This document shows, piece after piece, positions 8,605 through 44,690 of a stretch of 64,000 nucleotides of DNA. Position 1 is the first letter of the stretch. Each line of letters begins with the position of its first letter. The translations under genes were made by a program, and so were the position numbers. Under the pieces are notes generated by a model, which saw only the letters and a program-made list of their open reading frames with translations, did no database searches and was not told where the DNA came from. The DNA comes from Ostrea edulis (taxonomy: Eukaryota), in contig NC_079167.1 of assembly GCF_947568905.1 (NCBI RefSeq), positions 22,630,001 through 22,694,000 of the forward strand, written 5' to 3'.

Positions 8605-11600
8605 GGAGACTGTATCATTATGTAATAGGACGGGGGACTGTATCGTTATCTTGAAGGTCGGGGGACTGTATCATTATTTAGGAGGACGGGGGACTGTATC
8701 ATTATCTAGGAGGACGGGGGACTGTATCATTATCTAGGAGGACGGGGGACTGTATCATTATCTAGGAGGACGGAGGGACTGTATCATTATCTAGAAGGTC
8801 GGGGGACTGTATCATTATCTAGGAGGACGGGGGACTGTATCATTATCTAGGAAGACGGAGGGACTGTATCATTATCTAGAAGGTCGGGGGACTGTATCAT
8901 TATCTAGGAGGACGGGGGACTGTATCATTATCTAGAAGGTCGGGGGACTGTATCATTATCTAGAAGGTCGGGGGACTGTATCATTATCTAGGAGGACGGG
9001 GGACTGTATCATTATCTAGGAGGACGGAGGGACTGTATCATTATCTAGAAGGTCGGGGGACTGTATCATTATCTAGGAGGACGGGGGACTGTATCATTAT
9101 CTAGAAGGTCGGGGGACTGTATCATTATCTAGGAGGACGGGGGACTGTATCATTATCTAGGAGGACGGGGGACTGTATCATTATCTAGGAGGACGGGGGA
9201 CTGAATCATTATCTAGGAGGACGGGGGACTGTATCATTATCTAGGAGGACGGGGTGGGTGGGTGGGTGGACTGTATCATTATCTAGGAGGACGGGGGACT
9301 GTATCATTATCTAGGAGGACGGGGGGGGGGGGGCTGTATCATTATCTAGAAGGACGGGGGACTGTATCATTATCTAGAAGGACGGGGGACTGTATTATTA
9401 TCTAGAAGGACGGGGGACTGTATCATTATCTAGGAGGTCGGGGGACTGTATTATTATCTAGGAGGACGGGGGGGGGGGGGGGCTGTATCATTATCTAGGA
9501 GGACGGGGGACTGTATCATTATCTAGAAGGACGGGGGACTGTATTATTATCTAGAAGGACGGGGGACTGTATCATTATCTAGGAGGTCGGGGGACTGTAT
9601 TATTATCTAGGAGGACGGGGGGGGGGGGGGGCTGTATCATTATCAAGGAGGACGGGGGGGGGGGGCTGTATCATTATCAAGGAGGACTGGGGGGGGGGAG
9701 AGGACTGTATCATTATCTAGGAGGACAGAGGACTGTATCATTATCAAGAAGGACGGGGGGGGGGGGGCTGTATCATTATTTAGGAGGACGGGGGACTGTA
9801 ACATTATTTAGGAGGACGGGGGACTGTATCATTATCTAGAAGGTCGGGGAACTGAATCATTATCTAGGAGGACGGGGGACTGTATCATTATCTAGAAGGT
9901 CGGGAAACTGAATCATTATCTAGGAGGACGAGGGGGCCTGCATCATTATCTAGGAGGACGGGGGACTGTATCATTATCTAGAAGGACGGGGGAGGGGGGG
10001 GACTGTATCATTATCTAGGAGAATGGGAGACTATCATTATCTAATAGGACGGGGACTGTATCATTATCTAGGAGGACGAGGGACTGAATCATTATCTAGA
10101 AGGTCGGGGGACTGAATCATTATCTAGGAGGACGAGGGACTGAATCATTATCTAGAAGGTCGGGGGACTGTATCATTATCTAGGAGGACGGGGGACTGTA
10201 TCATTATCTAGGAGGACGGGGGACTGTATCATTATCTAGAAGGTCGGGGGACTGTATCATTATCTAGAAGGACGGGAGATTGTATCATTATCTAGAAGGA
10301 CGGGGGACTGTATCATTATCTAGGAGGACGGGGGTGTGTGTATCACTATCTAGGAGGACGGGGGACTGACGGGGGACTGTATTATTATCTAGGAGGACGG
10401 GGGACTGTATCATTATCTAGAAGGTCGGGGGACTGTATCATTATCTAGAAGGTCGGGGGACTGTATCATTATCTAGGAGGACGGGGGACTGTATCATTAT
10501 CTAGGAGGACGGGGGACTGTATCATTATCTAGGAGGACGGGGGACTGTATCATTATCTAGGAGGACGGGGGGGGGGGGGCTGTATCATTATCTAGAAGGA
10601 CGGGGGATTGTATCATTATCTAGGAGGACGGGGGACTGTATCATTATCTAGGAGGACGGGGGCGGGGGGGGGGGGGCTGTATCATTATCTAGAAGGACGG
10701 GGGACTGTATCATTATCTAGGAGGACGGGGGACTGTATCATTATCTAGGAGGACGGGGTGGGTGGGTGGGTGGACTGTATCATTATCTAGGAGGACGGGG
10801 GACTGTATCATTATCTAAGAGGACGGGGGGGGGGGCTGTATCATTATCTAGAAGGACGGGGGACTGTATCATTATCTAGAAGGACGGGGGACTGTATTAT
10901 TATCTAGAAGGACGGGGGACTGTATCATTATCTAGGAGGACGGGGGACTGTATCATTATCGAGGAGGACGGGGGGGGGGGCTGTATAATTATCTAGAAGG
11001 ACGGGGGACTGTATCATTATCTAGGAGGTCGGGGGACTGTATTATTATCTAGGAGGACGGGGGGGGGGGGGGCTGTATCATTATCAAGGAGGACTTGGGG
11101 GGGGGGGAGAGGACTGTATCATTATCTAGGAGGACGGAGGACTGTATCATTATCAAGGAGGACGGGGGGGGGGGGGAACTGTAACATTATTTAGGAGGAC
11201 GGGGGACTGTATCATTATCTAGGAGGTCGGGGAACTGAATCATTATCTAGGAGGACGAGGGGGCCTGCATCATTATCTAGGAGGACGGGGGACTGTATCA
11301 TTATCTAGAAGGACGGGGGAGGGGGGACTGTATCATTATCTAGGAGAATGGGAGACTATCATTATCTAATAGGACGGGGACTGTATCATTATCTAGGAGG
11401 ACGAGGGACTGAATCATTATCTAGAAGGTCGGGGGACTGAATCATTATCTAGGAGGACGAGGGACTGAATCATTATCTAGAAGGTCGGGGGACTGTATCA
11501 TTATTTAGGAGGACGGGGGACTGTATCATTATCTAGGAGGACGGGGGACTGTATCATTATCTAGAAGGTCGGGGGACTGTATCATTATCTAGAAGGACGG

Positions 11601-11918
11601 GAGATTGTATCATTATCTAGAAGGACGGGGGACTGTATCATTATCTAGGAGGACGGGGGACTGTATCATTATCTAGGAGGACGGGGGGGGGGGGGTATCA
11701 TTATCTAGGAGAACGGGGGACTATCATTATCTAGGAGGACGGGGGTGTGTGTATCACTATCTAGGAGGACGGGGGGACTGACGGGGGACTGTATTATTAT
11801 CTAGGAGGACGGGGGACTGTATCATTATCTAGGAGGAGGGGGGGGGTATCATTATCAAGGAGGATGGGGGACTATCATTATCAAGGAGGAGGGGGGCTGT
11901 ATCATTATCTAGGAGGAC
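8605..11918 (+). repeat. G-rich 28-bp minisatellite, ~3.3 kb (GGGGGACTGTATCATTATCTAGGAGGAC)
   Basis: Over 100 tandem units; variants AGAAGGTC and expanded G tracts. Confidence 0.97.
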
Positions 11919-12916: not shown

Positions 12917-13573
12917 AACAAGAGGTTCATGGGCCACATCGCTCACCTGAGTCACCTTGGTCCATGTCAAAGACTTTCCATATATATTTGTATGTAAAAC
13001 CGAAGTCCCTATTATGGCCCCAAACTACCCCTGGAGGACATGACTTGAACAAACTTGAATCTGCACTATGTCAGAAAGCTTTCATGTAAATATCAGCTTT
13101 TCTGGCTCAGCGGTTCTTGAGAAGATGATTTTTAAATATTTTTCCCATATATTTGTATGTAAAACTTTGAATCTGCACTATATCAGGAAGCTTTCATATA
13201 AATCTCAGCTTTTCTGGCTCAATGGTTTTTGAGAAGAAGATTTTTAAAGATTTTTCATATATATGTATTTGTATGTAAAACTTTCATCCACCTTGTGGCC
13301 CCATCCAACCCCCGGGGCCATGATTTTAACAATTTAGAATCTGCACTACCTAATAAAGCTTATCTATAAATTTCATCTTTTCTGGCCCAGTGGTTCTTGA
13401 GAAGAAGATGCAACCAAAATTTCACATATTCTTAATTATCTCCCCTTGAAAAAGGGCATGACCCTTCATTTGAACAAATCTGAATCCCCTTCACCCAAAG
13501 ATGCTTTGTGGCAAGTTTGGTTGAATTTGGCCCAGTGGTTCTGGAGAGAAGTCAGGTTCAGGTGAGCTAAAAA
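12917..13573 (+). mobile_element. Helentron-type non-autonomous element with Cg170-like ~166-bp satellite units
   Basis: aacaagag...gctcacctgag 5' end, tcaggtgagctaa 3' subterminal inverted repeat, internal cttgaatctgcacta...ttcttgagaagaagat units. Confidence 0.8.
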
Positions 13574-14546: not shown

Positions 14547-15140
14547 TTTTAGCTCACCTGAGCCGGACTCGTCGTAAACTTTTTACATTTTCATCATTTC
14601 CAGAACCACTGGACCAATTTCAACGACACTTGGCACAAAGCATACTTGGGTGAAAGGAAATTCATGTTTGTTCAAATGAAGCGTCATGCCCCCTCCAAGG
14701 GGGAGATAATCATAAAAATGCAAAAGGGGGGGGGTATTTAAAAATCTTCTCAAGAACTACAGGGCCAGAAAAGCTGAAATTTACAAGAAAACTTTCTGAC
14801 AAAGTGGAAATTCAAGTTTTTTTTAAATCATGACCCCTGGGTAGGGTGGAACCACAATAGGGGATCAAAGTTTTACATGCGAATGTATAGGGAACCAAAC
14901 TTGGCACAAAGCATCCTTAGATATGAAAAGTCATACTCGTCTTCATGGGCATATGATAATTTTAAATGAATTTGTAGTCAAGTTTAATAATTAAATTCGA
15001 TATTTAATGAATTTTTAGTCGTAATTTTTGAAAAGTTTTTTCCTAAACCAAACTGCGTGTATAATGATAATTTTGCTCAAGCTTGTTTCTTGCTAGGAAC
15101 TAATGCTTAGATGAGCGATGTGGACCATGGACCTCTTGTT
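14547..15140 (-). mobile_element. Helentron-type / Cg170-like element
   Basis: Reverse complement of the 12917-13573 family with both termini (ttagctcacctgag ... cctcttgtt). Confidence 0.8.
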
Positions 15141-16099
15141 AAAGACTTACTCTCATAGACTAATGCATGAATTTTTCTGAAAAGTTGTACTCTTTACTCA
15201 CCATATCAAGATGTACATGTACATTTCACATTGACATTTTGATTTGACAGAGTCCCCCCTTCTTTTGACAGGTGTTTCTTCAGCTGAATGAACTTTTGTA
15301 ATGACCTGTTCTCTCACTGAGACAACAAAATAAGTTTAGGATAGAGTATAATGGAATAAGTGTGTCAGTTTGTCTGTCTGTGAATATGATTACATCGGAT
15401 TATCCCTTGCAAACGAATTTGGGGTGGGGTGGGGGTGGGGTGGGGTAAATTAGAATCCCCTTGTCCGTAGGTCATATTCAACAAGTTCAAGGTCAGATTT
15501 TATTTATGACAATACTGGATTATTTCCATTTCTTTGATATCCCCAAACAAACAGGCAGCTTATACATGTGTATACTCATTACTGCATTGGTCAATTGTGT
15601 TAGACAATTATATATTGTATTAAATTCTGAAATCTTACGTAGATCATTCACAAGTTTAAAATGGTCTTTATAAAATGTAACATCGATTAGACATTTTTAT
15701 TCTCTCCTACAAAAATGAATTTATTCAATTGTGGTATTTGCTTTATATCCAGGCGAAGAACTTCTGGTTTTTAAAGTTCTGGTTAGGTAAACATTTCAAT
15801 TTCGTTTTCCAATTTCTTGGGTTCCAGTCAGCAAAAACTACCCAGAAGATGCGACGCTTGGCGATGTAAACAGTTAAATTATACATTCAAATCCCTCTTC
15901 GGAGGTTGTGGTAGAATTGGGGTCCAAAACTGCCGCAATTAAGAATTTTGAAAATCAGTATGAAATTATGACATACCAGAAATAAACGATCCGAGCAATC
16001 ACAGGAAAAACATTAAAAGTACATTGATATTTATTCTTTTATTTAAAAAAAAATACTGAAAAAAATATTCTGACGATGAATTTAACTAAATATTAAATA

Positions 16100-16255
16100 A
16101 GAGTCCAGATCTATCAAAACAAGAGTCCAGATCCATCAAAACAAGAGTTCAGATCCATCAAAACAAGAGTCCAGATCCATCAAAACAAGAGTCCAGATCC
16201 ATCAAAACAAGAGTCCAGATCCATCAGATTAAGAGTCTAGATCCATCAAAACAAA
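16100..16255 (+). repeat. 22-bp tandem repeat (AAGAGTCCAGATCCATCAAAAC) x~7, in the 3' UTR of the 156-aa gene
   Basis: Period 22 seen directly; starts ~10 nt after the TGA on the minus strand. Confidence 0.9.
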
Positions 16256-16263
16256 AGTCATCC

Positions 16264-16395
16264 TCAGGGTTTTAGTGTTATCCTAGAAAATCGAAGGACA
16301 AGCTCATCCACTAGGTTAGAACGAGTGTTGCATTCAGATTTTGTCCTCTTCGATGTCTCAACTGGGTCGGTGAATCTTTGTCTTTTACGAGATTT
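16264..16395 (-). CDS. 156-aa basic protein, coding exon 7 (KSRKRQRF...LVDELVLRFSRITLKP*)
   Basis: ttatctcttCAG acceptor, 132 nt, TGA at 16264-16266. Confidence 0.8.
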   Translation of the reverse strand, partial: KSRKRQRFTDPVETSKRTKSECNTRSNLVDELVLRFSRITLKP

Positions 16396-16494
16396 CTGAA
16401 GAGATAAATTTAATTAATAAACACGGTCTTTTACGTACATTTGAAAAGTTTGCGTCATGTTAAACCTTTTTCTTATCATAATACATGTACTTAC

Positions 16495-16557
16495 TTTTTC
16501 TGACTTTGTTTCCTTATGAGACTGAGCTCCCGCTGATTTACTCCCCTTCTTGGACAT
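16495..16557 (-). CDS. 156-aa basic protein, coding exon 6 (MSKKGSKSAGAQSHKETKSEK)
   Basis: CAG acceptor, 63 nt, GTAAGT donor, phase 0. Confidence 0.8.
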
Positions 16558-17030
16558 CTGTTTATAACAGATATATACATGTATATAAAGCCATTGTTAA
16601 TGTAATCATTTTCATTGAAATTTAATAGTATATAAATTATGTGATAAACTTCAAAGTGTACTTAGTGATTTGAAAATAAACGTAAAAACCGAGCATGACA
16701 TTTTGCACAACTTTAAGTGTACTTTTCTTAATTTACTGGGGCTAGAGACACAAAACTAGATAATATGAATTTCATTGATAGATGACATCATGTATATTGT
16801 CGAGCCTGTTAAAAACAGCAGATGATTCTCTACAATGAAGCTGAAGGTAATAACTCAAGCGTCCCTAACATGCCACAGAATTAATTCCCCATAATTCATC
16901 ACTCCTAACCCCCTCCCAAACCCAATGTTTTCTGGGAACTTCCTACCCATATAGTCAGTCCAATTGGCAAAGGAGACAATTTTGCAAATTCTCTGATTCG
17001 CTTTTTAATTGACTTCATTTACATGAATTC

Positions 17031-17109
17031 TAGCTGCAGAACTGTAGCTTTCTGAGAAACTATTGGCACTGTCCCAATATTTTGTCACAGAGCTACAGTT
17101 CTGCAGCTA
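17031..17109. mobile_element. 79-bp hairpin mini-MITE (TA ends)
   Basis: Perfect 19-bp TIR tagctgcagaactgtagct / agctacagttctgcagcta; related copies at ~42000, ~54185 and partials at ~14360 and ~63885. Confidence 0.75.
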
Positions 17110-17528
17110 TATGAATTCATGCTATGTATAAGATATACAGCACATATGCGTATAAAACCTTCTGGTAATATTCTATACAGTTGGGGGAAATGTTCACTAT
17201 ACATATGTAGAGAATCTTTATAGAAATTGTTCCAATGGATTCTATGTAGTAAACCTTTCAGAGAGGATTTCCTAGTTTCGGGGGGGGGGGGGGGGGGGGG
17301 GAGGGGGGGGGGCTCACCGGTATAAACTTTGAATACCTAGATTAAATAAGAGTATATATGTAATCCTGAAGACATGGTCCAGGTAAAACAAAAACACGTT
17401 CATATTCTACGTACATGTATCTGCTCCACATGGAGGAATATAGTTTGGCGAAAATGTCACGGGGAGACTTGTTTTCTTAGGAGAGGGTTGTATCAATAAC
17501 TGTAGTATTGCATGCAGTAGTTACTTAC

Positions 17529-17594
17529 GGACTCTCGTATAGACGTCAGCATTGCTGATACATTTTGCTCTATACTGGTCCACAAAGACAGATC
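17529..17594 (-). CDS. 156-aa basic protein, coding exon 5 (DLSLWTSIEQNVSAMLTSIRES)
   Basis: tctttTAG acceptor, 66 nt, GTAAGT donor, phase 0. Confidence 0.8.
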
Positions 17595-17696
17595 CTAAAA
17601 GATTAAACCATCTGTGACTTAACATGTATATATGCATAAAACTAGGATATATCAAATCATCAAAATAAAAGAAAAAAGAATTAGAAAACAACAGAC

Positions 17697-17759
17697 CTTT
17701 GGATGACTTTTGTGATGCTCTCCACTAGAGGAGCCTCGCCGGCGAATCTGAGACTGCGT
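17697..17759 (-). CDS. 156-aa basic protein, coding exon 4 (TQSQIRRRGSSSGEHHKSHPK)
   Basis: TAG acceptor, 63 nt, GTCTGT donor, phase 0. Confidence 0.75.
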
Positions 17760-17946
17760 CTATGAGTGTATAAATCGAGTAGTTAAATCGGATCATACTT
17801 CCTATCGACATATCTTTAGGCAGTTTTTGGTTCGTTCCGATTTCCATAATTACCATGATCCACCCCCCCCCCCCAACTAATTATCTTACAGCATACACAA
17901 ATGTACATTCACATTCCTGTATTGTACATGAATTTATATGTTTTAC

Positions 17947-18000
17947 CTTTGTTTGTCGGGATCTAGTTTTGTTACTTCTTTTATAATTCTGTGTGGCAAC
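17947..18000 (-). CDS. 156-aa basic protein, coding exon 3 (VATQNYKRSNKTRSRQTK)
   Basis: ttctttctatatcatgTAG acceptor, 54 nt, GTAAAA donor, phase 0. Confidence 0.75.
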
Positions 18001-18103
18001 CTACATGATATAGAAAGAACATGAAATTTCAATATTTTATGAAATTCTATAAAAATTTTGAACCTGCTTCAACATAATTATTGTAGTAATTAAATGATCG
18101 AAC

Positions 18104-18172
18104 CTTGTTTGACGACAGAGAGAGGTTCCGAAGAGCTGATGTGGCATCTTCGATATCTGCTTCATCAAATTT
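18104..18172 (-). CDS. 156-aa basic protein, coding exon 2 (KFDEADIEDATSALRNLSLSSNK)
   Basis: gttttcccttttCAG acceptor, 69 nt, GTTCGA donor (weaker), phase 0. Confidence 0.75.
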
Positions 18173-18490
18173 CTGAAAAGGGAAAACATTCTTCAGTACA
18201 CATTACTGTGTTTAAATCGTGGACTCGGAAATAGGTCCTGATCAAAACCGAGACTTCCGATAGTGAGAGAAAACAGGAGTAAAACTTTACTTTGGGGTGT
18301 GTGATGCTCTAAAGATATCTCATTAAGAATTTTATCACGAAAGTGAACTGTTACAGACATTTTATGAATTAAGACTGGTTAATAATTGTCTACAGATATT
18401 TCAAAGACGATTAACCTAGAGTATTTTGGTTAAAACATAACAAAAGGAAATTCTTAGCGATATATATCGTTCACATCGTGGAATATTTAC

Positions 18491-18514
18491 CCTCTTGTTT
18501 CGTGAATTTTTCAT
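18491..18514 (-). CDS. 156-aa basic protein, coding exon 1 (MKNSRNKR)
   Basis: ATG at 18514, 24 nt, AGG|GTAAAT donor, phase 0, ~100 nt downstream of the CRE/CCAAT cluster. Confidence 0.6.
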
Positions 18515-18611
18515 CTCAGTAGAAATTTTCTTCCCTAATATATACTAGTATTGCACAGCTTAAAAACGTGCCTGTTTCCTCCGTAAGAATGCGTTGGAAA
18601 CAAGCTGTAAC

Positions 18612-18680
18612 TCTGCAACGTCATAATTGATAACGTCATAATCCATAACGTCATAATCCATTATAGGAGCCAATAGGAAA
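18612..18680 (-). promoter_or_regulatory. Candidate promoter: three ATGACGT (CRE/ATF-like) motifs plus CCAAT box
   Basis: acgtcataat x3 and agccaatagg immediately upstream of the first coding exon. Confidence 0.45.
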
Positions 18681-18984
18681 TGTTTACCCGTGGGTGATCA
18701 TACATTGTACTTCGTTCTACAAAACTCCGACGATGGCCAACAGGTGTATGTCATAAAATATTTTTCTGATTAATAGATAAACAAAATTTAATCTATCGCC
18801 CTTCATGAAAATTATAACTGTGTGGAAGGTTTCGCCATTCTTGCACTGTTCTTGAACACATCTTATTGTATAAATACACAAAAGAATATACATCTTGAAT
18901 GCGAGTTCTCCCTCTATAAAGTTACCCACTAAATAAATCTGATAGGACTAAATCAAATTAAATTATCCACCGAACAGATTATTC

Positions 18985-19841
18985 AAAATCTGTTACATTT
19001 ATTAAGACACCACAGAGTCATCCACTTCTGCTTCATACTTAGATATTTTATTGAAAGTAGATATTAACGGCAAATTAAAAACTCAACTTTATGACAAACG
19101 GAATGATTTCTGCTTCTCCATCGTCAACTTCCCCTATTTATGTAGCAATATTCCATTATCACCTGCATATGGTGTTTATATCTATAAACTGATTCGATAC
19201 GCAAGAGCTTGTTCTGCGTATTGTCAGTTTTTAAATCAAATGATTAATCATATTTTGTTGAATTAGCGTGCCACACCTACTGTGACACGGGACATCCGTT
19301 TTTGAGGTCATCTCCGAGGACCCGTGACATTTACACCTGATGCCGAGCGTTTGGCGATGGAATTGTCACTACCTATTTTAACGATTAAAGTTTGTTGCGG
19401 CGAGATTCGAGCCCCGGCCTTCCGCATGCAGGGTGAACACTCTAACCACTACACTACCGCGGTGGTTTAAAATCGAGACAGGCTGCTAACAAACAAAGTG
19501 ATGGTACAGGGGTTTCAACAGTCTCGTTTGAAGTCAGCAGTTATCGTTATAACGATCTAGTTTGCCATTACAACTTATCATTGGGTCAAATGATGTCTGG
19601 TGTGTTTCATACCGAGTGCTAGGTCGTTCTTGGCACACTGGTTTTGACTACGAATAACTCCGTTTACCTGATCAAGTTATAGGACTCACGGCGAGTGTGA
19701 CCGGTCGACAGGGGGTGCTTACTCGTCATAGGCACCTGATCCCATCCCTGGTGTGTCCAGGGGTCCGTGTTTGCCCAATTCTCTATTTTGTATTGCTTAT
19801 GAGAGTTAAGAGATTGATCACTGTTCGTTATCTTCACCTCT
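18985..19841 (+). mobile_element. Penelope-like (Naiad-type) RT C-terminus and 3' UTR, interrupted by a SINE
   Basis: IKDTTESSTSASYLDILL..QLYDKRNDF.FSIVNFPYLCSNIPLSPAYGVYI..LIRYARACS ... LLTNK.MVQGFQQSRLKS; the ORF ends soon after RT with no C-terminal GIY-YIG, consistent with permuted (N-terminal EN) PLEs. Confidence 0.75.
19237..19466 (-). mobile_element. tRNA-derived SINE (Meta-type central domain), 3'-truncated
   Basis: Head accgcggtagtgtagtggttagag (A box) ... ggctcgaatc (B box); core gtcccgtgtcacagtaggtgtggcacg; TTTAAATC-like duplication on both sides. Confidence 0.7.
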
Positions 19842-19990: not shown

Positions 19991-20750
19991 TCAGCTCACC
20001 TGAGCCGGAGGCTAAAGTGAGCATTTTTGATCGAAATTTGTCTGTTGTCTGTCTGTCGTAAACTTTTCACATTTTCATCTTCGTACAAGTGTATTATAGA
20101 TTTACTTTAATTATGTAAAAATAAAAATTTGAAGACAAAAAAAAACACTATTTTCTATGATCATTATTTATCTTAAATTTTGAGTTTTCAAAATGTTTCA
20201 TTTCTGGTTGCCGTTTTAGCTGCTCAAGTGGGCTTTTTTGATCTTTTGTCCGTTGTCTGTCGTCATCGTCGTCGTAAACATTTTATATATTTTCATCATC
20301 TCCAGAACCACTGGGCCAATATCAACCCAACATGGTACAAAGCATCCTTGGATAAAGGGATTCTTCAAATGAAGGGCCATGTATCCTTCAAAAGGGAGAT
20401 AAACACAAAATAGGGCCGGGTTATTTAAAAATCTTGTTCTCAAAAACCACTGGGCCAGAAAATCCTGAAATTTCCATGAAAGCTTCCTGTCATAGTGGAG
20501 ATTCAAGTATAATAAAATCATGACCCATAGGTGGAGGTAGGGACCACAATAGGGGTTCAAAATTTTGCATGCGAATATATAAAGAAAATCTTTAAAACTC
20601 TTCATCTCAAGAACCACCTGGCCATAAATAAGACTGGAGATTTAAGTGAAAGCTTCCTGACAAAGTGGAAATTCAAGTTTGTAAAAATAATGACCCCTGG
20701 TGTAATGGTAGGGCCACAGTAGGGGATCAAAGTTTTGCATGCGAATTATC
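19991..20750 (-). mobile_element. Helentron-type / Cg170-like element, partly duplicated end
   Basis: cagctcacctgagcc terminus at ~19992, again degraded at ~20216, followed by Cg170-like units. Confidence 0.7.
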
Positions 20751-21798: not shown

Positions 21799-22458
21799 AA
21801 CTCACCTGAGCTGAAAAACTACTGGTCCCGGAAAGTGGAAATTTAGATGAAAGCTTCCTAACATAGTGCAGATTCAAGTTTGTACAAATTTTTACATACA
21901 AATATATAGGGAAAATCTTTAAAAATCTTCTTCTAAAAATCTACTGGACCAGGAAATTTACATGAAAGCTTCCTGACAGAGTACAGATTCAAGTTAGTTT
22001 GTTAAAATCATGGCCCCGGGGGTAAGATGAGGAGACAATAGGGGGTCAAAATTTCACATACAAATATATAAGGAAAATCTTTAAAAAATCTTCTCAAAAA
22101 CTACTGAGCCAGGAAAGTTGAAATTTACTTGAAACATTCCTGACATAGTGAAGATTTAAGTTTATTAAAATCATGGCTCCCGGGGGTAAGATGAGGCAAT
22201 AATAGAGGATTAAAGTTTTATATACAAATATATAGGGAAAATCATTAGAATTCTTCTGATGAAATCACTGGGCCAGAAAAGTTTACATTTACATGAAAGC
22301 TTCCTGACATAGTCCAGATTCAATTTTGGAAAAAAAACCCATGGCCCCCGGGAGTAGTTTGGGGGCACAATAAGTTTTACATGCGAATATATTGGAAAAT
22401 TCTTTAAATGTGAGCCAAGGTGACTCAGGTGAGCGATGTGGCCCATAGGGCTTTTGTT
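21799..22458 (-). mobile_element. Helentron-type / Cg170-like element, ~3.5 satellite units
   Basis: ctcacctgagctg ... caggtgagcgatgtggcccat termini. Confidence 0.8.
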
Positions 22459-30163: not shown

Positions 30164-33100
30164 CTATTGTGACTTCTTTGCTAGTTTTGTATGTTATGTG
30201 GTAACTATTGTGACTTCTTTGTTAGTTATGTGGTAACTATTGTGACTTCTTTGTTAGTTTTGTATGTTATATGGTAACTATTGTGACGTCTTTGTTAGTT
30301 TGGTATGTTATGTGGTAACTATTGTGATTTCTTTGTTAGTTTTGTATGTTATGTGGTAACTATTGTGACTTCTTTGCTAGTTTTGTGTGTAATGTGGTAA
30401 TTATTGTGACTTCTTTGTTAGTTTTGTATGTTATGTGGTAACTATTGTGACTTCTTTGTTAGTTTTGTATGTTATGTGGTAACTATTGTGACTTCTTTGT
30501 TAGTTTTGTATGTTATGTGGTAATTATTGTGACTTCTTTGTTAGTTTTGTATGTTATGTGGTAACTATTGTTTGTTTGATATTCGTAGGATTGGTTAACT
30601 ATATATCGTTAACCGAATGGTGACTGTATTATCTGCCATAATACTATCCATCTCATTGCGATCCAGCCTCACCCTCCAACACCTCCCAAATGCACCAACA
30701 TAGTGAAGTTGAAGTGTGTTGTAGTAACATACATATGCTCCGTATGGGACGTATGGGTTGTCCCATGGTTTAAAAATTAAATAAATATAAATAAATAAGG
30801 ACCATCGTGTACCAACACGTCTAATGACTGTGGTTCTGTCTTTTGATGGCCGGACACATACATGTGGTCATATGTCATAAATCATAATGAAATAAAGAAG
30901 TAACTTATAAATGATTCATAAAATTGATAAAGAAAATTTAATATAATAATTTTTATTTGATTTGATTTATTTAATAATTTTAATAATAATTTATTTATTT
31001 AATAATTTTAATAATAATTTCTGTTTAATATATTATAATTTTTTATAAATAACAGAATATTTAATATTTATTTGGATTTGGATTTTAATAGAAGGTAATA
31101 ATTAGTAATATTAGTAACAGGTAAAAGTAATAGGGATGTACATGTATGTATGTAGGTATGTATATACATGTGAAATAACTAAAATATATACAGAAAAGAA
31201 TTAGGGTAGGGTCGCCAAAGAAAATTTTGAAAATAGAGTGCTACTAGTTATTAGTTATTAATTATAAATTATGCCATACAACAATTTTGAGATCGTCATT
31301 AGGCAAGAATTTTGAGGTCGTCATCAGGTGCTACACCTCATACCCTGTACCATGTTTCTGTAGCTAGATCCAGCTTATAGCACGACATGGCTCCCTAACT
31401 CTTATTCGATAGTATTTATTATGTATGTAAACTAAAGATGTATATCGTAATAAAATAATAAAGTAAAAAAGGTTAGTGAGTTAGTTCATATAACAAATTA
31501 GTATGACATAGATTAAATTAATGACTATATCAATGGCTATAATAATTGATTTTAAAATAATATATAACCGTGATATTACAGCATAATAATTTACATATAA
31601 ACACATAAACATACATTTACATATGCACAGATATATACATATAATATAACCATTGTGACTTCTTTGTTAGTTTTGTATGTTATGTGGTAACTATTGTGAC
31701 GTCTTTGTTAGTTTTGTATGTAATGTGGTAACTATTGTGACGTCTTTGTTAGTTTTGTATGTTATATGGTAACTATTGTGACTTCTTTGTTAGTTTTGTA
31801 TGTTATGTGGTAACTATTGTGACTTCTTTGCTAGTTTTGTATGTTATGTGGTAACTATTGTGACTTCTTTGCTAGTTTTGTGTGTAATGTGGTAACTATT
31901 GTGACTTCTTTGTTAGTTTTGTATGTTATGTGGTAACTATTGTGACGTCTTTGTTAGTTATGTGGTAACTATTGTGACTTCTTTGCTAATTTTGTATGTT
32001 ATGTGGTAACTATTGTGACTTCTTTGTTAGTTATGTGGTAACTATTGTGACTTCTTTGTTAGTTTTGTATGTTATGTGGTAACTATTGTGACGTCTTTGT
32101 TAGTTTTGTATGTTATGTGGTAACTATTGTGACTTCTTTGTTAGTTTTGTATGCTATGTGGTAACTATTGTGACTTCTTTGTTAGTTTTGTATGTTATGT
32201 GGTAACTATTGTGACTTCTTTGCTAGTTTTGTATGTAATGTGGTAACTATTGTGACTTCTTTGTTAGTTTGGTATGTTATGTGGTAACTATTGTGACTTC
32301 TTTGTTAGTTTTGTATGTAATGTGGTAACTATTGTGACTTCTTTGTTAGTTTTGTATGTTATGTGGTAACTATTGTGACTTCTTTGCTAGTTTTGTATGT
32401 AATGTGGTAACTATTGTGACTTCTTTGTTAGTTATGTGGTAACTATGTGACTTCTTTGCTAGTTTTGTATGTTATGTGGTAATTATTGTGACTTCTTTGT
32501 TAGTTTTGTATGTTATGTGGTAACTATTGTGACTTCTTTGTTAGTTTTGTATGTTATGTGGTAACTATTGTGACTTCTTTGTTAGTTTTGTATGTTCTGT
32601 GGTAACTATTGTGACTTCTTTGCTAGTTTTGTGTGTAATGTGGTAATTATTGTGACTTCTTTGTTAGTTTTGTATGTTATATGGTAACTATTGTGACTTC
32701 TTTGCTAGTTTTGTATGTAATGTGGTAACTATTGTGACTTCTTTGTTAGTTATGTGGTAACTATGTGACTTCTTTGCTAGTTTTGTATGTTATGTGGTAA
32801 CTATTGTGACTTCTTTGTTAGTTTTGTATGTTATGTGGTAACTATTGTGACTTCTTTGTTAGTTTTGTATGTTATGTGGTAACTATTGTGACTTCTTTGT
32901 TAGTTTTGTGTGTAATGTGGTAATTATTGTGACTTCTTTGCTAGTTTTGTATGTTATGTGGTAACTATTGTGACTTCTTTGTTAGTTTTGTATGTTATGT
33001 GGTAACTATTGTGACTTCTTTGTTAGTTTGGTATGTTATGTGGTAACTATTGTGACTTCTTTGTTAGTTTTGTGTGTAATGTGGTAATTATTGTGACTTC

Positions 33101-33920
33101 TTTGTTAGTTTTGTATGTTATGTGGTAACTATTGTGACTTCTTTGCTAGTTTTGTATGTTATGTGGTAACTATTGTGACTTCTTTGTTAGTTTTGTATGT
33201 TATGTGGTATCTATTGTGACTTCTTTGTTAGTTTTGTATGTTATGTGGTAATTATTGTGACTTCTTTGCTAGTTTTGTATGTTATGTGGTAACTATTGTG
33301 ACTTCTTTGTTAGTTTTGTATGTTATGTGGTATCTATTGTGACTTCTTTGTTAGTTTTGTATGTTATGTGGTAACTATTGTGACTTCTTTGTTAGTTTTG
33401 TATGTTATGTGGTAACTATTGTGACTTCTTTGTTAGTTATGTGGTAACTATGTGACTTCTTTGCTAGTTTTGTATGTTATGTGGTAACTATGTGACTTCT
33501 TTGTTAGTTTTGTATGTTATGTGGTAACTATTGTGACTTCTTTGCTAGTTTTGTATGTTATGTGGTAACTATTGTGACTTCTTTGTTAGTTATGTGGTAA
33601 CTATTGTGACTTCTTTGTTAGTTTTGTATGTTATGTGGTAACTATTGTGACTTCTTTGTTAGTTTTGTATGTTATGTGGTAACTATTGTGACTTCTTTAT
33701 TAGTTTTGTATGTTATGTGGTAACTATTGTGACTTCTTTGTTAGTTTTGTGTGTAATGTGGTAATTATTGTGACTTCTTTGCTAGTTTTGTATGTTATGT
33801 GGTAACTATGTGACTTCTTTGTTAGTTTGGTATGTTATGTGGTAACTATTGTGACTTCTTTGCTAGTTTTGTATGTTATGTGGTACATGTAATTATTTTG
33901 GCTTCTTTGCTAGTCTTGTA
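30164..33920 (+). repeat. 41-bp satellite (AACTATTGTGACTTCTTTGTTAGTTTTGTATGTTATGTGGT) with 30-bp deletion variants, split by a 1.08-kb insert
   Basis: Arrays at 30164-30570 and 31652-33920; period 41 measured. Confidence 0.97.
30571..31646. mobile_element. Unclassified AT-rich insertion in the satellite
   Basis: Flanked by TAACTATTG (30562-30570) and TAACCATTG (31647-31655); no TIR or ORF seen. Confidence 0.55.
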
Positions 33921-34271: not shown

Positions 34272-34742
34272 GATGCACCAATCGGAAGCCTTGCAGTGTA
34301 CGGCAGTTCCAGGTTATGCACCAATCGGAAGCCTCGCAGTATACGGCAGTTCTAGGTGATACACCAATCGGAAGCCTCGCAGTATACGGCAGTTCCAGGT
34401 GATGCACCAATCGGAAGCCTCGCAGTATACTGCAGTTCTAGGTGATACACCAATCGGGAATCTCGCAGAATACGACAGTTCCATGAGATGCACCTGTCGG
34501 AAGCATCACTGTATATGACATTTCCAGGTGCTGCACCAGTCGGAATCATCACAGTATACGGCAGTTCCAGGTGCTGCACCAGTCGGAATCATCACAGTAT
34601 ACGGCAGTTCCAGGTGATGCACCAGTCGGAAGCATCACAGTATACGGCAGTTCCAGGTGCTGCACCAATCGGAAGCATCACAGTATACGGCAGTTCCAGG
34701 TGCTGCACCAGTCGGAAGCATCATAGTATATGGCAGTTCCAC
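34272..34742 (+). repeat. 43-bp GC-balanced minisatellite, ~11 copies, two sub-types
   Basis: ccaggtgatgcaccaatcggaagcctcgcagtatacggcagtt; period 43. Confidence 0.95.
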
Positions 34743-35286
34743 GTGACCCCCACCAATAAATGAAGTTCTCCTTCGCGAGCACAGGTAATAAATCCATGGC
34801 CATATGCCTCGTCAAATATAATTTTTTCTCGGGATATAGATTTCTCAAATAACCTTCTGACACATTAGGCCAAGACAAAATTTTCATTTTGATATATACA
34901 CATTCTTACACTTTCCTCGCGTTAGTTTACTGACAATCAATTCTCAATTCTCTGTCTGTACGTCTACCACCAAGTCCCGGTGCGCTTCTACCAAACTTGC
35001 TTTGAAATGATCCCATTTAATTAAAGAAAATATAACGTATTTCTAACTAAACCGGTAACTTCTTAAATATATGCTTATATTGCACAAGTTAGCAAATCGC
35101 ACTGCAACTTTGACTATTAAGCTTCTTATCGACCACAGGAGCAGTGCGTATTGGGAAATGAGAAATCATCTTGCATTTTTTCGGAAGTTTTTACAAATAC
35201 TCCCCGGAATGGCAGTGTGTAAAATATAGAAGCAACTCATTATGAGTTTCCAGTATAGATAAAAGTTATGTTGTTTAAATATAGTA

Positions 35287-43310: not shown

Positions 43311-43454
43311 TTAAGGTTTCCAATTTGGTCCTGCCTTGTTTTACTACTTCCTAATTATCTCCCTTTGACGATGACGGACAAATTTTTCTTTATCCTCCAT
43401 GTACCTACGACTCAGATGAGCTAAACAAGCTAAAACCAAATCAAACCAACAAAA

Positions 43455-44690
43455 ACAAAAAAGGGCGGTAACCTAAAAAAGACAGACAACAACATATATA
43501 GAGGGCGGTGACTTCAAAACAGACAACAAAAAACAAAATATAGAGGGCGATAACCTAAAAAACACAGACAACAAAAACAAAATATAGAGGGCGATAACCT
43601 AAAAACACAGACAACAAAAACAAAATATAGAGGGCGATAACCCACAAAACCACAGGCAATCAAAACAAAATATAGAGGGCGGTAACACCCAGAAACACAG
43701 ACAACAAAAACTAAATATAGAGGGCGATAACCTAAAAAACACAGACAACAAAAACAAAATATAGAGGGCGATAACCTAAAAACACAGACAACAAAAACAA
43801 AACATAGAGGGCGATAACCCACAAAACCACAGGCAATCAAAACAAAATATAGAGGGCGGTAACTTCAAACAGACGACAAAAACTAAATATAGAGGGCGAT
43901 AACCTAAAAACACAGACAACAAAAACAAAACATAGAGGGCGATAACCTAAAAAACACAGACAACAAAAACAAAATATATATAGAGGGCGGTAACCCAGAA
44001 AAACACAGACAACAAAAACAAAATATAGAGGGCGGTAACCCAAAAAAACCACAGGCAATCAAAACAAAATATAGAGGGCGGTAACCCACAAAAACACAGG
44101 CAACAAAAACAAAATATAGAGGGCGGTAACCCATAAAACACAGGCAACAAAAACAAAATGTAGATGGTTGTAAATCCAAAACAGACAACATAAACGAAAC
44201 ATTATGGAGGGTTGTAACTTCACAACAAACAACAAAAACAAAATATTATAGAGGTTTGTAACCTCAAAACATAGACAGATAAAACAACAAAATGCAGAGG
44301 GTGGTAACCCAAAACACAATCAACAAAACCTAAATAAAGACGGTGATAACCTTAAAACAGACAACAAAAATCAATATACAGGGCGGTCTCCTCCAAAACA
44401 CAGACAACAAAAACCAATATACAGGGCGGTCTCCTCCAAAACACAGACAACAAAAACCAATATACAGAGCGGTCTCCTCCAAAACACAGACAACAAAAAC
44501 CAATATACAGAGCGGTCTCCTCCAAAACACAGACAACAAAAACCAATATACAGGGCGGTCTCCTCCAATACACAGACAACAAAAACCAATATACAGGGCG
44601 GTCTCCTCCAATACACAGACAACAAAAACCAATATACAGGGCGGTCCCCTCCAATACACAGACAACAAAAACCAATATACAGGGCGGTGT
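43455..44690 (+). repeat. A/C-rich 40-43-bp minisatellite with two sub-arrays
   Basis: Left unit tagagggcgataacctaaaaaacacagacaacaaaaacaaaata; homogeneous right unit tacagggcggtctcctccaaaacacagacaacaaaaaccaata (period 43). ORFs in the track here are repeat artefacts. Confidence 0.95.

What the first reader, a model, noticed from the sequence alone, without database searches (positions are those of the whole stretch)
16264..18514. Unannotated-looking 7-exon, all-phase-0 gene for a 156-aa basic protein with paired NLS/NES-like modules
Seen: exons of 24, 69, 54, 63, 66, 63 and 132 nt, all multiples of 3 and all GT-AG, with no stop until the last exon. None appears in the ORF track. Protein: MKNSRNKRKFDEADIEDATSALRNLSLSSNKVATQNYKRSNKTRSRQTKTQSQIRRRGSSSGEHHKSHPKDLSLWTSIEQNVSAMLTSIRESMSKKGSKSAGAQSHKETKSEKKSRKRQRFTDPVETSKRTKSECNTRSNLVDELVLRFSRITLKP (37 K+R, 16 D+E by my count). 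Both ends show a basic cluster (RNKRKF; RKRQRF) followed by a CRM1-type hydrophobic pattern (ATSALRNLSL; LVLRFSRITL), with a central PKA consensus RRGS. Inference: a lineage-specific nucleocytoplasmic shuttling or chromatin-binding protein; symmetric exons allow free exon skipping. I recognise no family.
Basis: partly seen in the sequence, partly recalled or inferred. Interest (0 to 1): 0.8.

Follow-up and report, generated by a model that had tools for sequence, protein, structure and literature searches.

The report
Fast-evolving orphan oyster basic-protein gene family
The seven small exons are real and belong to a flat-oyster gene family of about nine copies, half of them decayed, that encodes a short, floppy, positively charged protein with nuclear-import and export-like motifs; nothing like it was found in the protein databases, and whether it is transcribed could not be tested.

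Summary
That pattern alone is not beyond chance: 95% of shuffled sequences allow an equally long chain.

What makes it a gene is a paralogous family in the same genome, with 8 loci plus one fragment on 5 chromosomes:
- Four copies are intact, one has a frameshift in the last exon, and three are pseudogenes.
- Intact copies keep all splice sites and have only in-frame exon indels.
- dN/dS is 0.31-0.45, against about 0.8 for a permutation null.
- Third codon positions change more than first, and first more than second.
- A CCAAT box plus three TGACGT motifs upstream and an AATAAA downstream are conserved.

The conserved protein features are a bipartite NLS-type cluster, a C-terminal helix fitting the class-1a export-signal consensus, and a central hydrophobic helix. 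The RRGS "PKA site" is not conserved.

Pfam, PDB sequences, a 1.84-billion-protein search (last exon) and a word search (exons 6-7) found no relative.

No RNA run was available, so transcription and the splice junctions are untested. Shuttling is inference.

The window's own lineage shows no purifying selection. Exons diverge faster than all non-coding parts of the unit, and this is unexplained.

The exons were never joined for any search.

The parts
18491..18514 (-). Exon 1 (start codon, 8 codons: MKNSRNKR), donor GTAAAT
   Evidence: ATG and donor are conserved in 6 paralogs; C9a has TTG. There is no conserved acceptor upstream, so this is the first coding exon.
18104..18172 (-). Exon 2 (23 codons): acidic stretch plus the conserved IE[DE]A[TI]SA[LF][RQ][NK]LSLS hydrophobic motif
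   Evidence: AG/GT is kept in all copies. The exon is 69 nt in all intact copies.
17947..18000 (-). Exon 3 (18 codons): basic cluster, KRRRKTRSRRTK in paralogs and KRSNKTRSRQTK here
17697..17759 (-). Exon 4 (21 codons): conserved QSQIRR, then a variable Gly/Ser stretch that holds the non-conserved RRGS, then GEHHKSH
   Evidence: There is an in-frame +3 nt in C2a.
17529..17594 (-). Exon 5 (22 codons): the best-conserved block, DLxxWxxIEQNVSAMLxSIRES, a probable short helix
   Evidence: alignment A2: 10 invariant columns in 7 copies. One search finds it at exactly 8 loci in the genome.
16495..16557 (-). Exon 6 (21 codons): Lys/Ser-rich linker
16264..16395 (-). Exon 7 (43 codons plus TGA): bipartite NLS-type SRKRQRF-x-KRTK, then the C-terminal helix SNLVDELVLRFSRITL
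   Evidence: alignment A1: 28 invariant columns. (AlphaFold2 helix at residues 28-41, pLDDT about 80). Searches give the genomic copies.
18570..18690 (-). Core promoter / 5' UTR: inverted CCAAT box (+ strand 18670-18674), three TGACGT half-CRE motifs 15 nt apart (18653-18648, 18638-18633, 18623-18618), and a GTTTCC...GGAAAC inverted pair (18601-18574)
   Evidence: The block aligns in all 7 copies that keep exon 1, pseudogene C9a included; it diverges about as much as other non-coding parts. TF binding and the transcription start are inferred, not shown.
16030..16043 (-). Two AATAAA polyadenylation signals; the one at 16043-16038 aligns with the AATAAA of all paralogs
16095..16259 (-). 22-nt tandem array (7.5 copies) in the presumed 3' UTR, starting just after the stop codon. 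It is a single unit in the older paralogs and has expanded in the window lineage.
19004..19470 (-). Very high-copy SINE-like repeat with a tRNA-like head, immediately upstream of the duplicated unit. Its 3' part is shared in the same position by copies C6 and C2b.
   Evidence: word depth about 1e5, loose ends at 19003-19006. ARAGORN calls no tRNA here.

Best explanation
This is one intact member of a taxonomically restricted, fast-evolving gene family of the flat oyster. Each unit is about 3.3 kb. It has a CCAAT plus TGACGT promoter, seven tiny phase-0 exons, a stop codon and an AATAAA signal.

The product is a 156-160-aa, mostly disordered, basic, Ser/Thr-rich protein with three short hydrophobic islands. 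I infer that it enters the nucleus through the conserved bipartite basic cluster of exon 7 (and, in paralogs, the KRRRK cluster of exon 3). I infer that it uses the conserved exon-5 helix and the C-terminal amphipathic helix as docking motifs. The C-terminal helix fits the CRM1 class-1a export consensus, so shuttling is possible.

The family evolves by birth and death: four old lineages, each duplicated again, with half the copies decayed.

Shown: exon structure, family, coding constraint, motif conservation.
Inferred: transcription, nuclear import, export, any partner.
For: - Exon model.
- Family of 8 loci plus a fragment. The tree shows four pairs.
- Four copies are fully intact. All AG/GT sites are kept, and exon indels are only 3 or 6 nt. 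Decayed copies carry 1-nt indels, stops, a lost ATG or lost donors.
- dN/dS is 0.35-0.45 among old lineages. Off-frames give 0.68-2.0 and non-coding pseudo-frames 0.56-1.02.
- The permutation null has median 0.73-0.84. P(omega<=observed) is 0.0017-0.05, and P(no new stop) is 0.03-0.24.
- Codon positions diverge in the order 3 > 1 > 2.
- Between old lineages the short introns show about 2-4 gap events per 100 bp, whereas exons of the intact copies differ in length only by whole codons.
- Promoter motifs and AATAAA are conserved.
- The NLS-type cluster and C-terminal motif are invariant in alignment A1, and the motif is predicted helical.
Against: - There is no transcript evidence. No RNA run holds the stretch, and the laid runs are DNA contigs without splice joints.
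- In the window's own lineage, codon positions 1+2 changed as much as or more than position 3 and more than introns. Window versus C4b differs by 6 non-synonymous to 1 synonymous change. This copy may therefore be unconstrained.
- Nonsynonymous divergence is about equal to non-coding divergence. Constraint is visible only relative to synonymous sites.
- NLS and NES assignments are consensus matches only. Hydrophobic moments are not significant against shuffles.
- Orthologues in other bivalves could not be examined.
Confidence: 0.55

Rival explanations
1. The family was once coding, but the window copy (and perhaps the whole family) is now silent or decaying. On this reading it is an intact-looking relic rather than a working gene.
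For: Half of the loci are pseudogenes or fragments. The window lineage has position 1 at 0.141, position 2 at 0.076 and position 3 at 0.087, against 0.061 for introns. Recent pairs show 6:1 and 12:2 non-synonymous to synonymous changes. No RNA holder was found.
Against: The window copy and C4b both keep all 7 exons, all splice sites, the ATG, the stop, the promoter motifs and AATAAA. The C6 and C2a lineages show clear purifying selection.
Confidence: 0.22
2. The unit is cargo or part of an uncharacterised mobile or repeatedly copied DNA segment. The ORF would serve that element, or nothing, rather than the host.
For: Intron-containing copies with their promoter lie on five chromosomes. The unit abuts a very high-copy SINE whose 3' part is shared in place by several copies. 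The surroundings are repeat-rich.
Against: There are only about 9 copies. The 5' ends are ragged, at about -330, about -450 and beyond -600. The 3' extensions differ between copies. I saw no terminal inverted or long terminal repeats at the unit ends; target-site duplications were not looked for. Flanking ORFs have no Pfam transposase or RT domain. Exon-7 and exon-5 searches found no intron-less copy, so there is no retrocopy.
Confidence: 0.12
3. The model is a chance chain of open segments with GT/AG borders, and no gene was ever there.
For: Such chains of at least 471 nt exist in 95% of shuffled sequences. No protein database match was found.
Against: Exactly these seven segments and their borders are kept open in three other copies that are 14-19% diverged. 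They show a codon-position substitution pattern and an omega below the null.
Confidence: 0.03

Closest known systems
Small NLS+NES shuttling adaptors and inhibitors (PKI, HIV-1 Rev-type proteins); comparison from my own knowledge of these proteins
   Same: It is a short, largely disordered protein. It has Arg/Lys clusters and a Leu-rich motif of the form phi-xxx-phi-xx-phi-x-phi at the C-terminus (LVLRFSRITL). The ending FSR[IL]TL resembles Rev's LERLTL. The motif is predicted helical.
   Different: There is no sequence homology and no Pfam match, exon by exon. The PKA-type RRGS is not conserved. It is a cellular, intron-rich, multi-copy gene. CRM1 and importin binding are untested.
Taxonomically restricted (orphan) gene families with birth-and-death evolution
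   Same: No detectable relatives outside the genome. It is small and disordered, shows elevated dN/dS, and has many pseudogenised copies and recent local duplications.
   Different: The structure is unusually regular: seven tiny exons, all in phase 0. Exons diverge more than introns and flanks between the old lineages.
Paralog sets whose non-coding DNA is more alike than their exons (primate red/green opsins and MHC class I, explained by gene conversion opposed by selection in exons); from my own knowledge, not tested
   Same: Exon divergence is 1.2-1.5 times non-coding divergence between old lineages. Third codon positions diverge about 2 times as much.
   Different: The copies lie on different chromosomes. 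The exons are tiny and interleaved with 100-nt introns, which makes intron-only conversion tracts implausible. No conversion tracts were demonstrated.

Membership tests
Protein-coding gene (as opposed to a chance ORF chain) | Reading frame and splice sites preserved in diverged copies | tested here: met
   Three other copies keep all 7 exons open with AG/GT borders, and exon indels are only 3 or 6 nt. P(no new stop) is 0.03-0.24 per comparison.
Protein-coding gene (as opposed to a chance ORF chain) | Fewer nonsynonymous than synonymous changes, in the proposed frame only | tested here: met
   Omega is 0.31-0.45 in frame 0, against 0.68-2.0 in off-frames and a null median of 0.73-0.84. This is not met in the window's own terminal lineage.
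Protein-coding gene (as opposed to a chance ORF chain) | Spliced, polyadenylated transcript | not testable with these tools
   No RNA run was offered. The four laid runs are DNA contigs covering the introns, and none shows a splice joint.
Classical bipartite NLS (importin-alpha cargo) | (K/R)(K/R)-x10-12-(K/R) in 3 of 5 positions, conserved | tested here: met
   KR-QRFTDPVETS-KRTKS in exon 7. Paralogs keep it with an 11-residue spacer. Binding and import were not tested.
CRM1-dependent leucine-rich NES, class 1a | phi1-xxx-phi2-xx-phi3-x-phi4 in an accessible, helix-forming segment | tested here: met
   L-VLR-F-SR-I-T-L lies at the C-terminus. The hydrophobic positions are kept in all intact copies, and residues 28-41 are predicted helical. 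The pattern is common in proteins generally, and function was not tested.
PKI (cAMP-dependent protein kinase inhibitor) family | Sequence match to the family profile and a conserved pseudosubstrate/PKA motif | tested here: not met
   No Pfam hit for any exon. RRRGS is RRPGG or RRRTGA in paralogs.
Transposable element | Defined termini (TIR/LTR), target-site duplication, element-encoded enzyme, high copy number | tested here: not met
   The ends are ragged. I saw no terminal repeats at the unit ends; target-site duplications were not looked for. There are about 9 copies. Flanking ORFs have no transposase or RT domain.

The most novel reading that the evidence does not exclude
The family is a conflict-driven set of nuclear-transport adaptors or decoys whose paralogs are kept different by selection. 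Exons, synonymous sites included, are 1.2-1.5 times more diverged than introns, promoter and 3' flank. This would mean either that the non-coding parts have been homogenised between chromosomes while exons were protected, or that the exons underwent a burst of exon-limited mutation.
Probability: 0.08. Interest if true: 0.6.

Novelty: new member of a known kind. Interest (0 to 1): 0.3.

Why it matters
The finding adds a protein family that my searches did not find in the protein collections (last exon, and exons 6-7). It gives its full census in one oyster genome: 4 intact copies, 1 nearly intact, 3 dead and 1 fragment. It also shows that the tiny-exon model is real coding sequence and not a chance construct.

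It is useful for oyster genome annotation and as a case of orphan-gene birth and death. It does not by itself open a major question. The functional label (nuclear, possibly shuttling) is only a testable guess.

The one odd point is that exons diverge faster than all non-coding parts of the unit. It would deserve attention if it holds up with orthologues.

Tried and rejected
- RNA evidence: the look-up of sequencing runs on 16200-18800 returned only four runs of unknown kind that hold the introns. Laying them gave DNA contigs and no splice joints. The only joints lie in repeats (17109/19136 and inside the SINE). Every exonic 'variant' except 16323 equals a difference to paralogs C4b or C4c, so they cannot be read as polymorphism.
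- In hindsight the query was mostly intron, which hides a small mRNA.
- Exhaustive HMMER search of exon 7 (43 aa) against 1.84e9 representatives: 0 hits.
- Word search with a 99-aa uninterrupted open frame of fragment C4c (exon 6, an open intron and exon 7; L007:1501-1797:-), so that 54-173-aa proteins were eligible: 0 hits. That database evidently lacks ORFs from this species' raw contigs, so the blank mainly says the protein is not in annotated sets.
- Pfam on exons 2 and 4-7 (exons 1 and 3 not scanned): only sub-threshold noise (DEP at E 0.15, Csa5, DUF3490), rejected.
- PDB sequence profiles: designed helical repeats at E 0.02-0.4, rejected.
- ESM Atlas: no usable hit.
- Rfam and ARAGORN around the gene: only weak hairpin hits to a palindromic MITE at 17024-17119, and no tRNA.
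- A divergent plus-strand gene starting at about 18725 was considered and dropped. That segment is a 43-nt insertion specific to the window lineage.
- CpG decay and transition bias were tested as causes of fast exon divergence and do not explain it.
- General exon hypermutability is not supported. The recent pairs window-C4b and C6-C1 have exon to non-coding ratios of 0.66 and 0.81.
- Retrocopies were sought through exon hits without introns. None was found.
All searches were exon by exon, by reference, and dN/dS was summed over per-exon counts.
Full report
**Where and what.** Earlier notes of this scan identify the genome as the flat oyster. The window is G000:C4:22630001-22694000. The finding lies on the minus strand.

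**Observation.**
- Every internal border is AG|exon|GT.
- The composition counts are right: 37 K+R, 16 D+E, 40 S+T and only 27 L/I/V/M/F/W.

**Is the pattern beyond chance?** Not by itself. A dynamic-programming search for the longest ATG...stop chain used minimal GT/AG borders, all exons in phase 0, at most 7 exons, exons of at least 21 nt and introns of at least 70 nt. It reaches 471 nt or more in 95% of shuffles of this stretch and in 94% of other stretches of the window. The case has to rest on other evidence.

**A family.**
- DNA and exon searches of the window's own genome find the same unit at eight loci plus one fragment:
  - the window copy;
  - C4b, 75 kb away, inverted, 95-98% identical;
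  - C4c, exons 6-7 only;
  - C1 and C6;
  - C2a and C2b, in tandem;
  - C9a and C9b.
- A tree of the promoter-to-exon-5 segment gives four well-supported pairs: (win, C4b), (C1, C6), (C2a, C2b) and (C9a, C9b).
- Introns are present in all copies. No intron-less copy exists.

**State of the copies.**
- The window copy, C4b, C6 and C2a keep all seven exons open and all AG/GT sites.
- Between them, exon length differences are only +3 or +6 nt.
- C1 is intact through exon 6 (with a GC donor) but is frameshifted in exon 7.
- C2b has 1-nt insertions in exons 2 and 4 and a stop in exon 7.
- C9a has lost the ATG, carries a stop in exon 5, and has lost that exon's donor.
- C9b has lost the exon-5 donor, carries a stop in exon 6, and is degraded in exon 7.

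**Coding constraint.**
- I summed Nei-Gojobori counts exon by exon, without joining exons.
- Between the three old lineages with intact copies (C9 left out), dN/dS is 0.35-0.45, with pS 0.28-0.33 and pN 0.11-0.155.
- The same measure in the two wrong frames of the exons is 0.68-2.0. In pseudo-frames of aligned non-coding DNA it is 0.56-1.02.
- I re-dealt the observed substitutions to sites with the same base. This gives a null median of 0.73-0.84. P(omega<=observed) is 0.0017-0.05, and the probability of creating no stop is 0.03-0.24.
- Differences fall in the order position 3 > 1 > 2 in all three comparisons.
- Between old lineages the short introns carry about 2-4 gap events per 100 bp, whereas exons of the intact copies differ in length only by whole codons.

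Together these results show that this frame was read as protein during the divergence of the family.

**Caveats on constraint.**
- On a three-taxon comparison, the window's own lineage changed at position 1 0.141, position 2 0.076 and position 3 0.087, against 0.061 in introns. That is no sign of purifying selection.
- C6 (0.065/0.054/0.152 against 0.080) and C2a (0.043/0.022/0.120 against 0.041) do show it.
- The recent pairs differ by 6 nonsynonymous to 1 synonymous change (win-C4b) and 12 to 2 (C6-C1).
- The window copy is intact, but it may be relaxed or adaptively changing.

**An unexplained pattern.**
- Between old lineages the exons differ at 14-19% of sites.
- Non-coding parts differ less: short introns 9.6-12.8%, the post-poly(A) flank 9-12%, distal upstream 9-16%, and the core promoter 8-12%.
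- Third positions differ at 22-27%. Restricting to sites outside CpG still gives 18-25%.
- Recent pairs do not show the excess: ratios are 0.66 and 0.81, and 1.69 for the pair that contains pseudogene C2b.
- General exon hypermutability is therefore unlikely.
- Two possibilities remain untested: homogenisation of the non-coding parts, or an early exon-limited burst.
- Statistical support is moderate (Fisher p from 0.002 to 0.2 per pair).

**Gene anatomy outside the exons.**
- Upstream of the ATG, all copies that keep exon 1 share a block with an inverted CCAAT box (+ strand 18670-18674).
- They also share two to three TGACGT half-CRE motifs. The window has three, 15 nt apart, at 18653-18618; TRF sees this as a 15-nt repeat.
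- A GTTTCC/GGAAAC inverted pair follows at 18601-18574.
- The ATG exon has no conserved acceptor in front of it, so it is the first coding exon.
- Downstream, an AATAAA (16043-16038) is conserved in all copies.
- In the old paralogs the stop codon is followed by one 22-nt unit. In the window lineage this unit has grown into a tandem array: 7.5 copies at 16095-16259, with fewer in C4b and C4c.
- The duplicated unit runs from about 15860 to about 19000-19150. Its ends are ragged and differ among copies.
- It abuts a SINE-like repeat with a tRNA-like head (19470-19004). That repeat has enormous copy number (word depth about 1e5), and C6 and C2b share its 3' part in place.
- I saw no terminal repeats at the unit ends; target-site duplications were not looked for. 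No element-type ORFs were found nearby.

**The protein (exon by exon).** The conserved blocks are:
- NK[RK]K across the exon 1/2 junction;
- IE[DE]A[TI]SA[LF][RQ][NK]LSLS in exon 2;
- a basic cluster in exon 3, KRRRKTRSRRTK in paralogs and weakened to KRSNKTRSRQTK here;
- QSQIRR in exon 4;
- DLxxWxxIEQNVSAMLxSIRES in exon 5, with 10 invariant columns;
- in exon 7, SRKR[QR]RF...KRTK followed by SNLVDExVLxFSxxTLxP, with 28 of 43 columns invariant.

What these blocks suggest:
- The exon-7 basic residues fit the bipartite NLS consensus.
- The C-terminal motif fits phi-xxx-phi-xx-phi-x-phi. AlphaFold2 on the exon-7 alignment predicts a helix at residues 28-41 with pLDDT about 80.
- Helical hydrophobic moments are above the shuffle means but not significantly so.
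- A nuclear, possibly shuttling, disordered adaptor is the best mechanistic guess. It rests on motif consensus only.

**Relatives.**
- Exon 7 against 1.84 billion cluster representatives: no hit.
- A 99-aa uninterrupted open frame of the C4c fragment covers exons 6 and 7. I used it so that full-length proteins were within the length window. No hit.
- Pfam (exons 2 and 4-7), PDB sequences (exon 5 and 7 profiles) and the ESM Atlas (exon 7): nothing credible.
- No tool here holds other mollusc genomes, so orthology is untested.
That step is left out.

**Transcription.**
- The four runs laid are DNA contigs that cover the introns, and they show no splice joints.
- All but one of their exonic differences equal the C4b/C4c paralog bases.
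- Whether any copy is expressed, and where, is open.

**Verdict.** This is a real coding gene family without detectable relatives, and it shows fast birth-and-death evolution. The window copy is intact but not demonstrably constrained. The functional reading is plausible but untested. It is ordinary in kind, with one odd substitution pattern worth a follow-up.

Noticed in passing
window 19004-19470 (minus strand): SINE-like element with a tRNA-like head (around 19462-19390). Its word depth is about 1e5 in four DNA runs, and its end at 19004 is marked by many loose ends. It sits directly upstream of the gene unit and is shared in place by paralogs C6 and C2b. It might have mediated the duplications.
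   Followed up: partly
window 16095-16259: A 22-nt tandem array starts just after the stop codon. It is a single unit in the old paralogs, about 4 copies in C4b, about 6 in C4c and 7.5 here. This is a growing minisatellite in the presumed 3' UTR.
   Followed up: partly
window 17024-17119: A near-perfect 39+39-nt palindrome (MITE-like) lies inside intron 5 and has dozens of copies genome-wide. It gives only sub-threshold miRNA-hairpin matches in Rfam.
   Followed up: partly
window 8608-11918: A 3.3-kb G-rich minisatellite with a 28-nt unit (GACTGTATCATTATCTAGGAGGACGGGG, about 114 copies) and strong GC skew.
   Followed up: no
window 31647-33885 and 30164-30571: A 41-nt satellite (56 and 10 copies) with strong GC and AT skew. 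Further 43-nt arrays lie at 34272-34746 and 43447-44688.
   Followed up: no
window 12949-13552, 14569-14894, 20222-20746, 21885-22458; also inside intron 5 of paralogs C1, C6, C2a, C2b: A repeat family with a period of about 164 nt occurs around the gene in the window. It is inserted in intron 5 of the other paralogs and accounts for their longer introns.
   Followed up: no
G000:C4:22720000-22725000 (L017) and C4:23593700-23594230 (L010): An inverted segmental duplicate of window 14569-19466 lies 75 kb away at 92-95% identity (gaps counted; about 98% in the gene segment). A truncated third copy (14569-16696) lies 0.95 Mb away. Contigs of four individuals carry the paralog-type bases, so assemblies and read mapping will confuse these copies.
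   Followed up: partly
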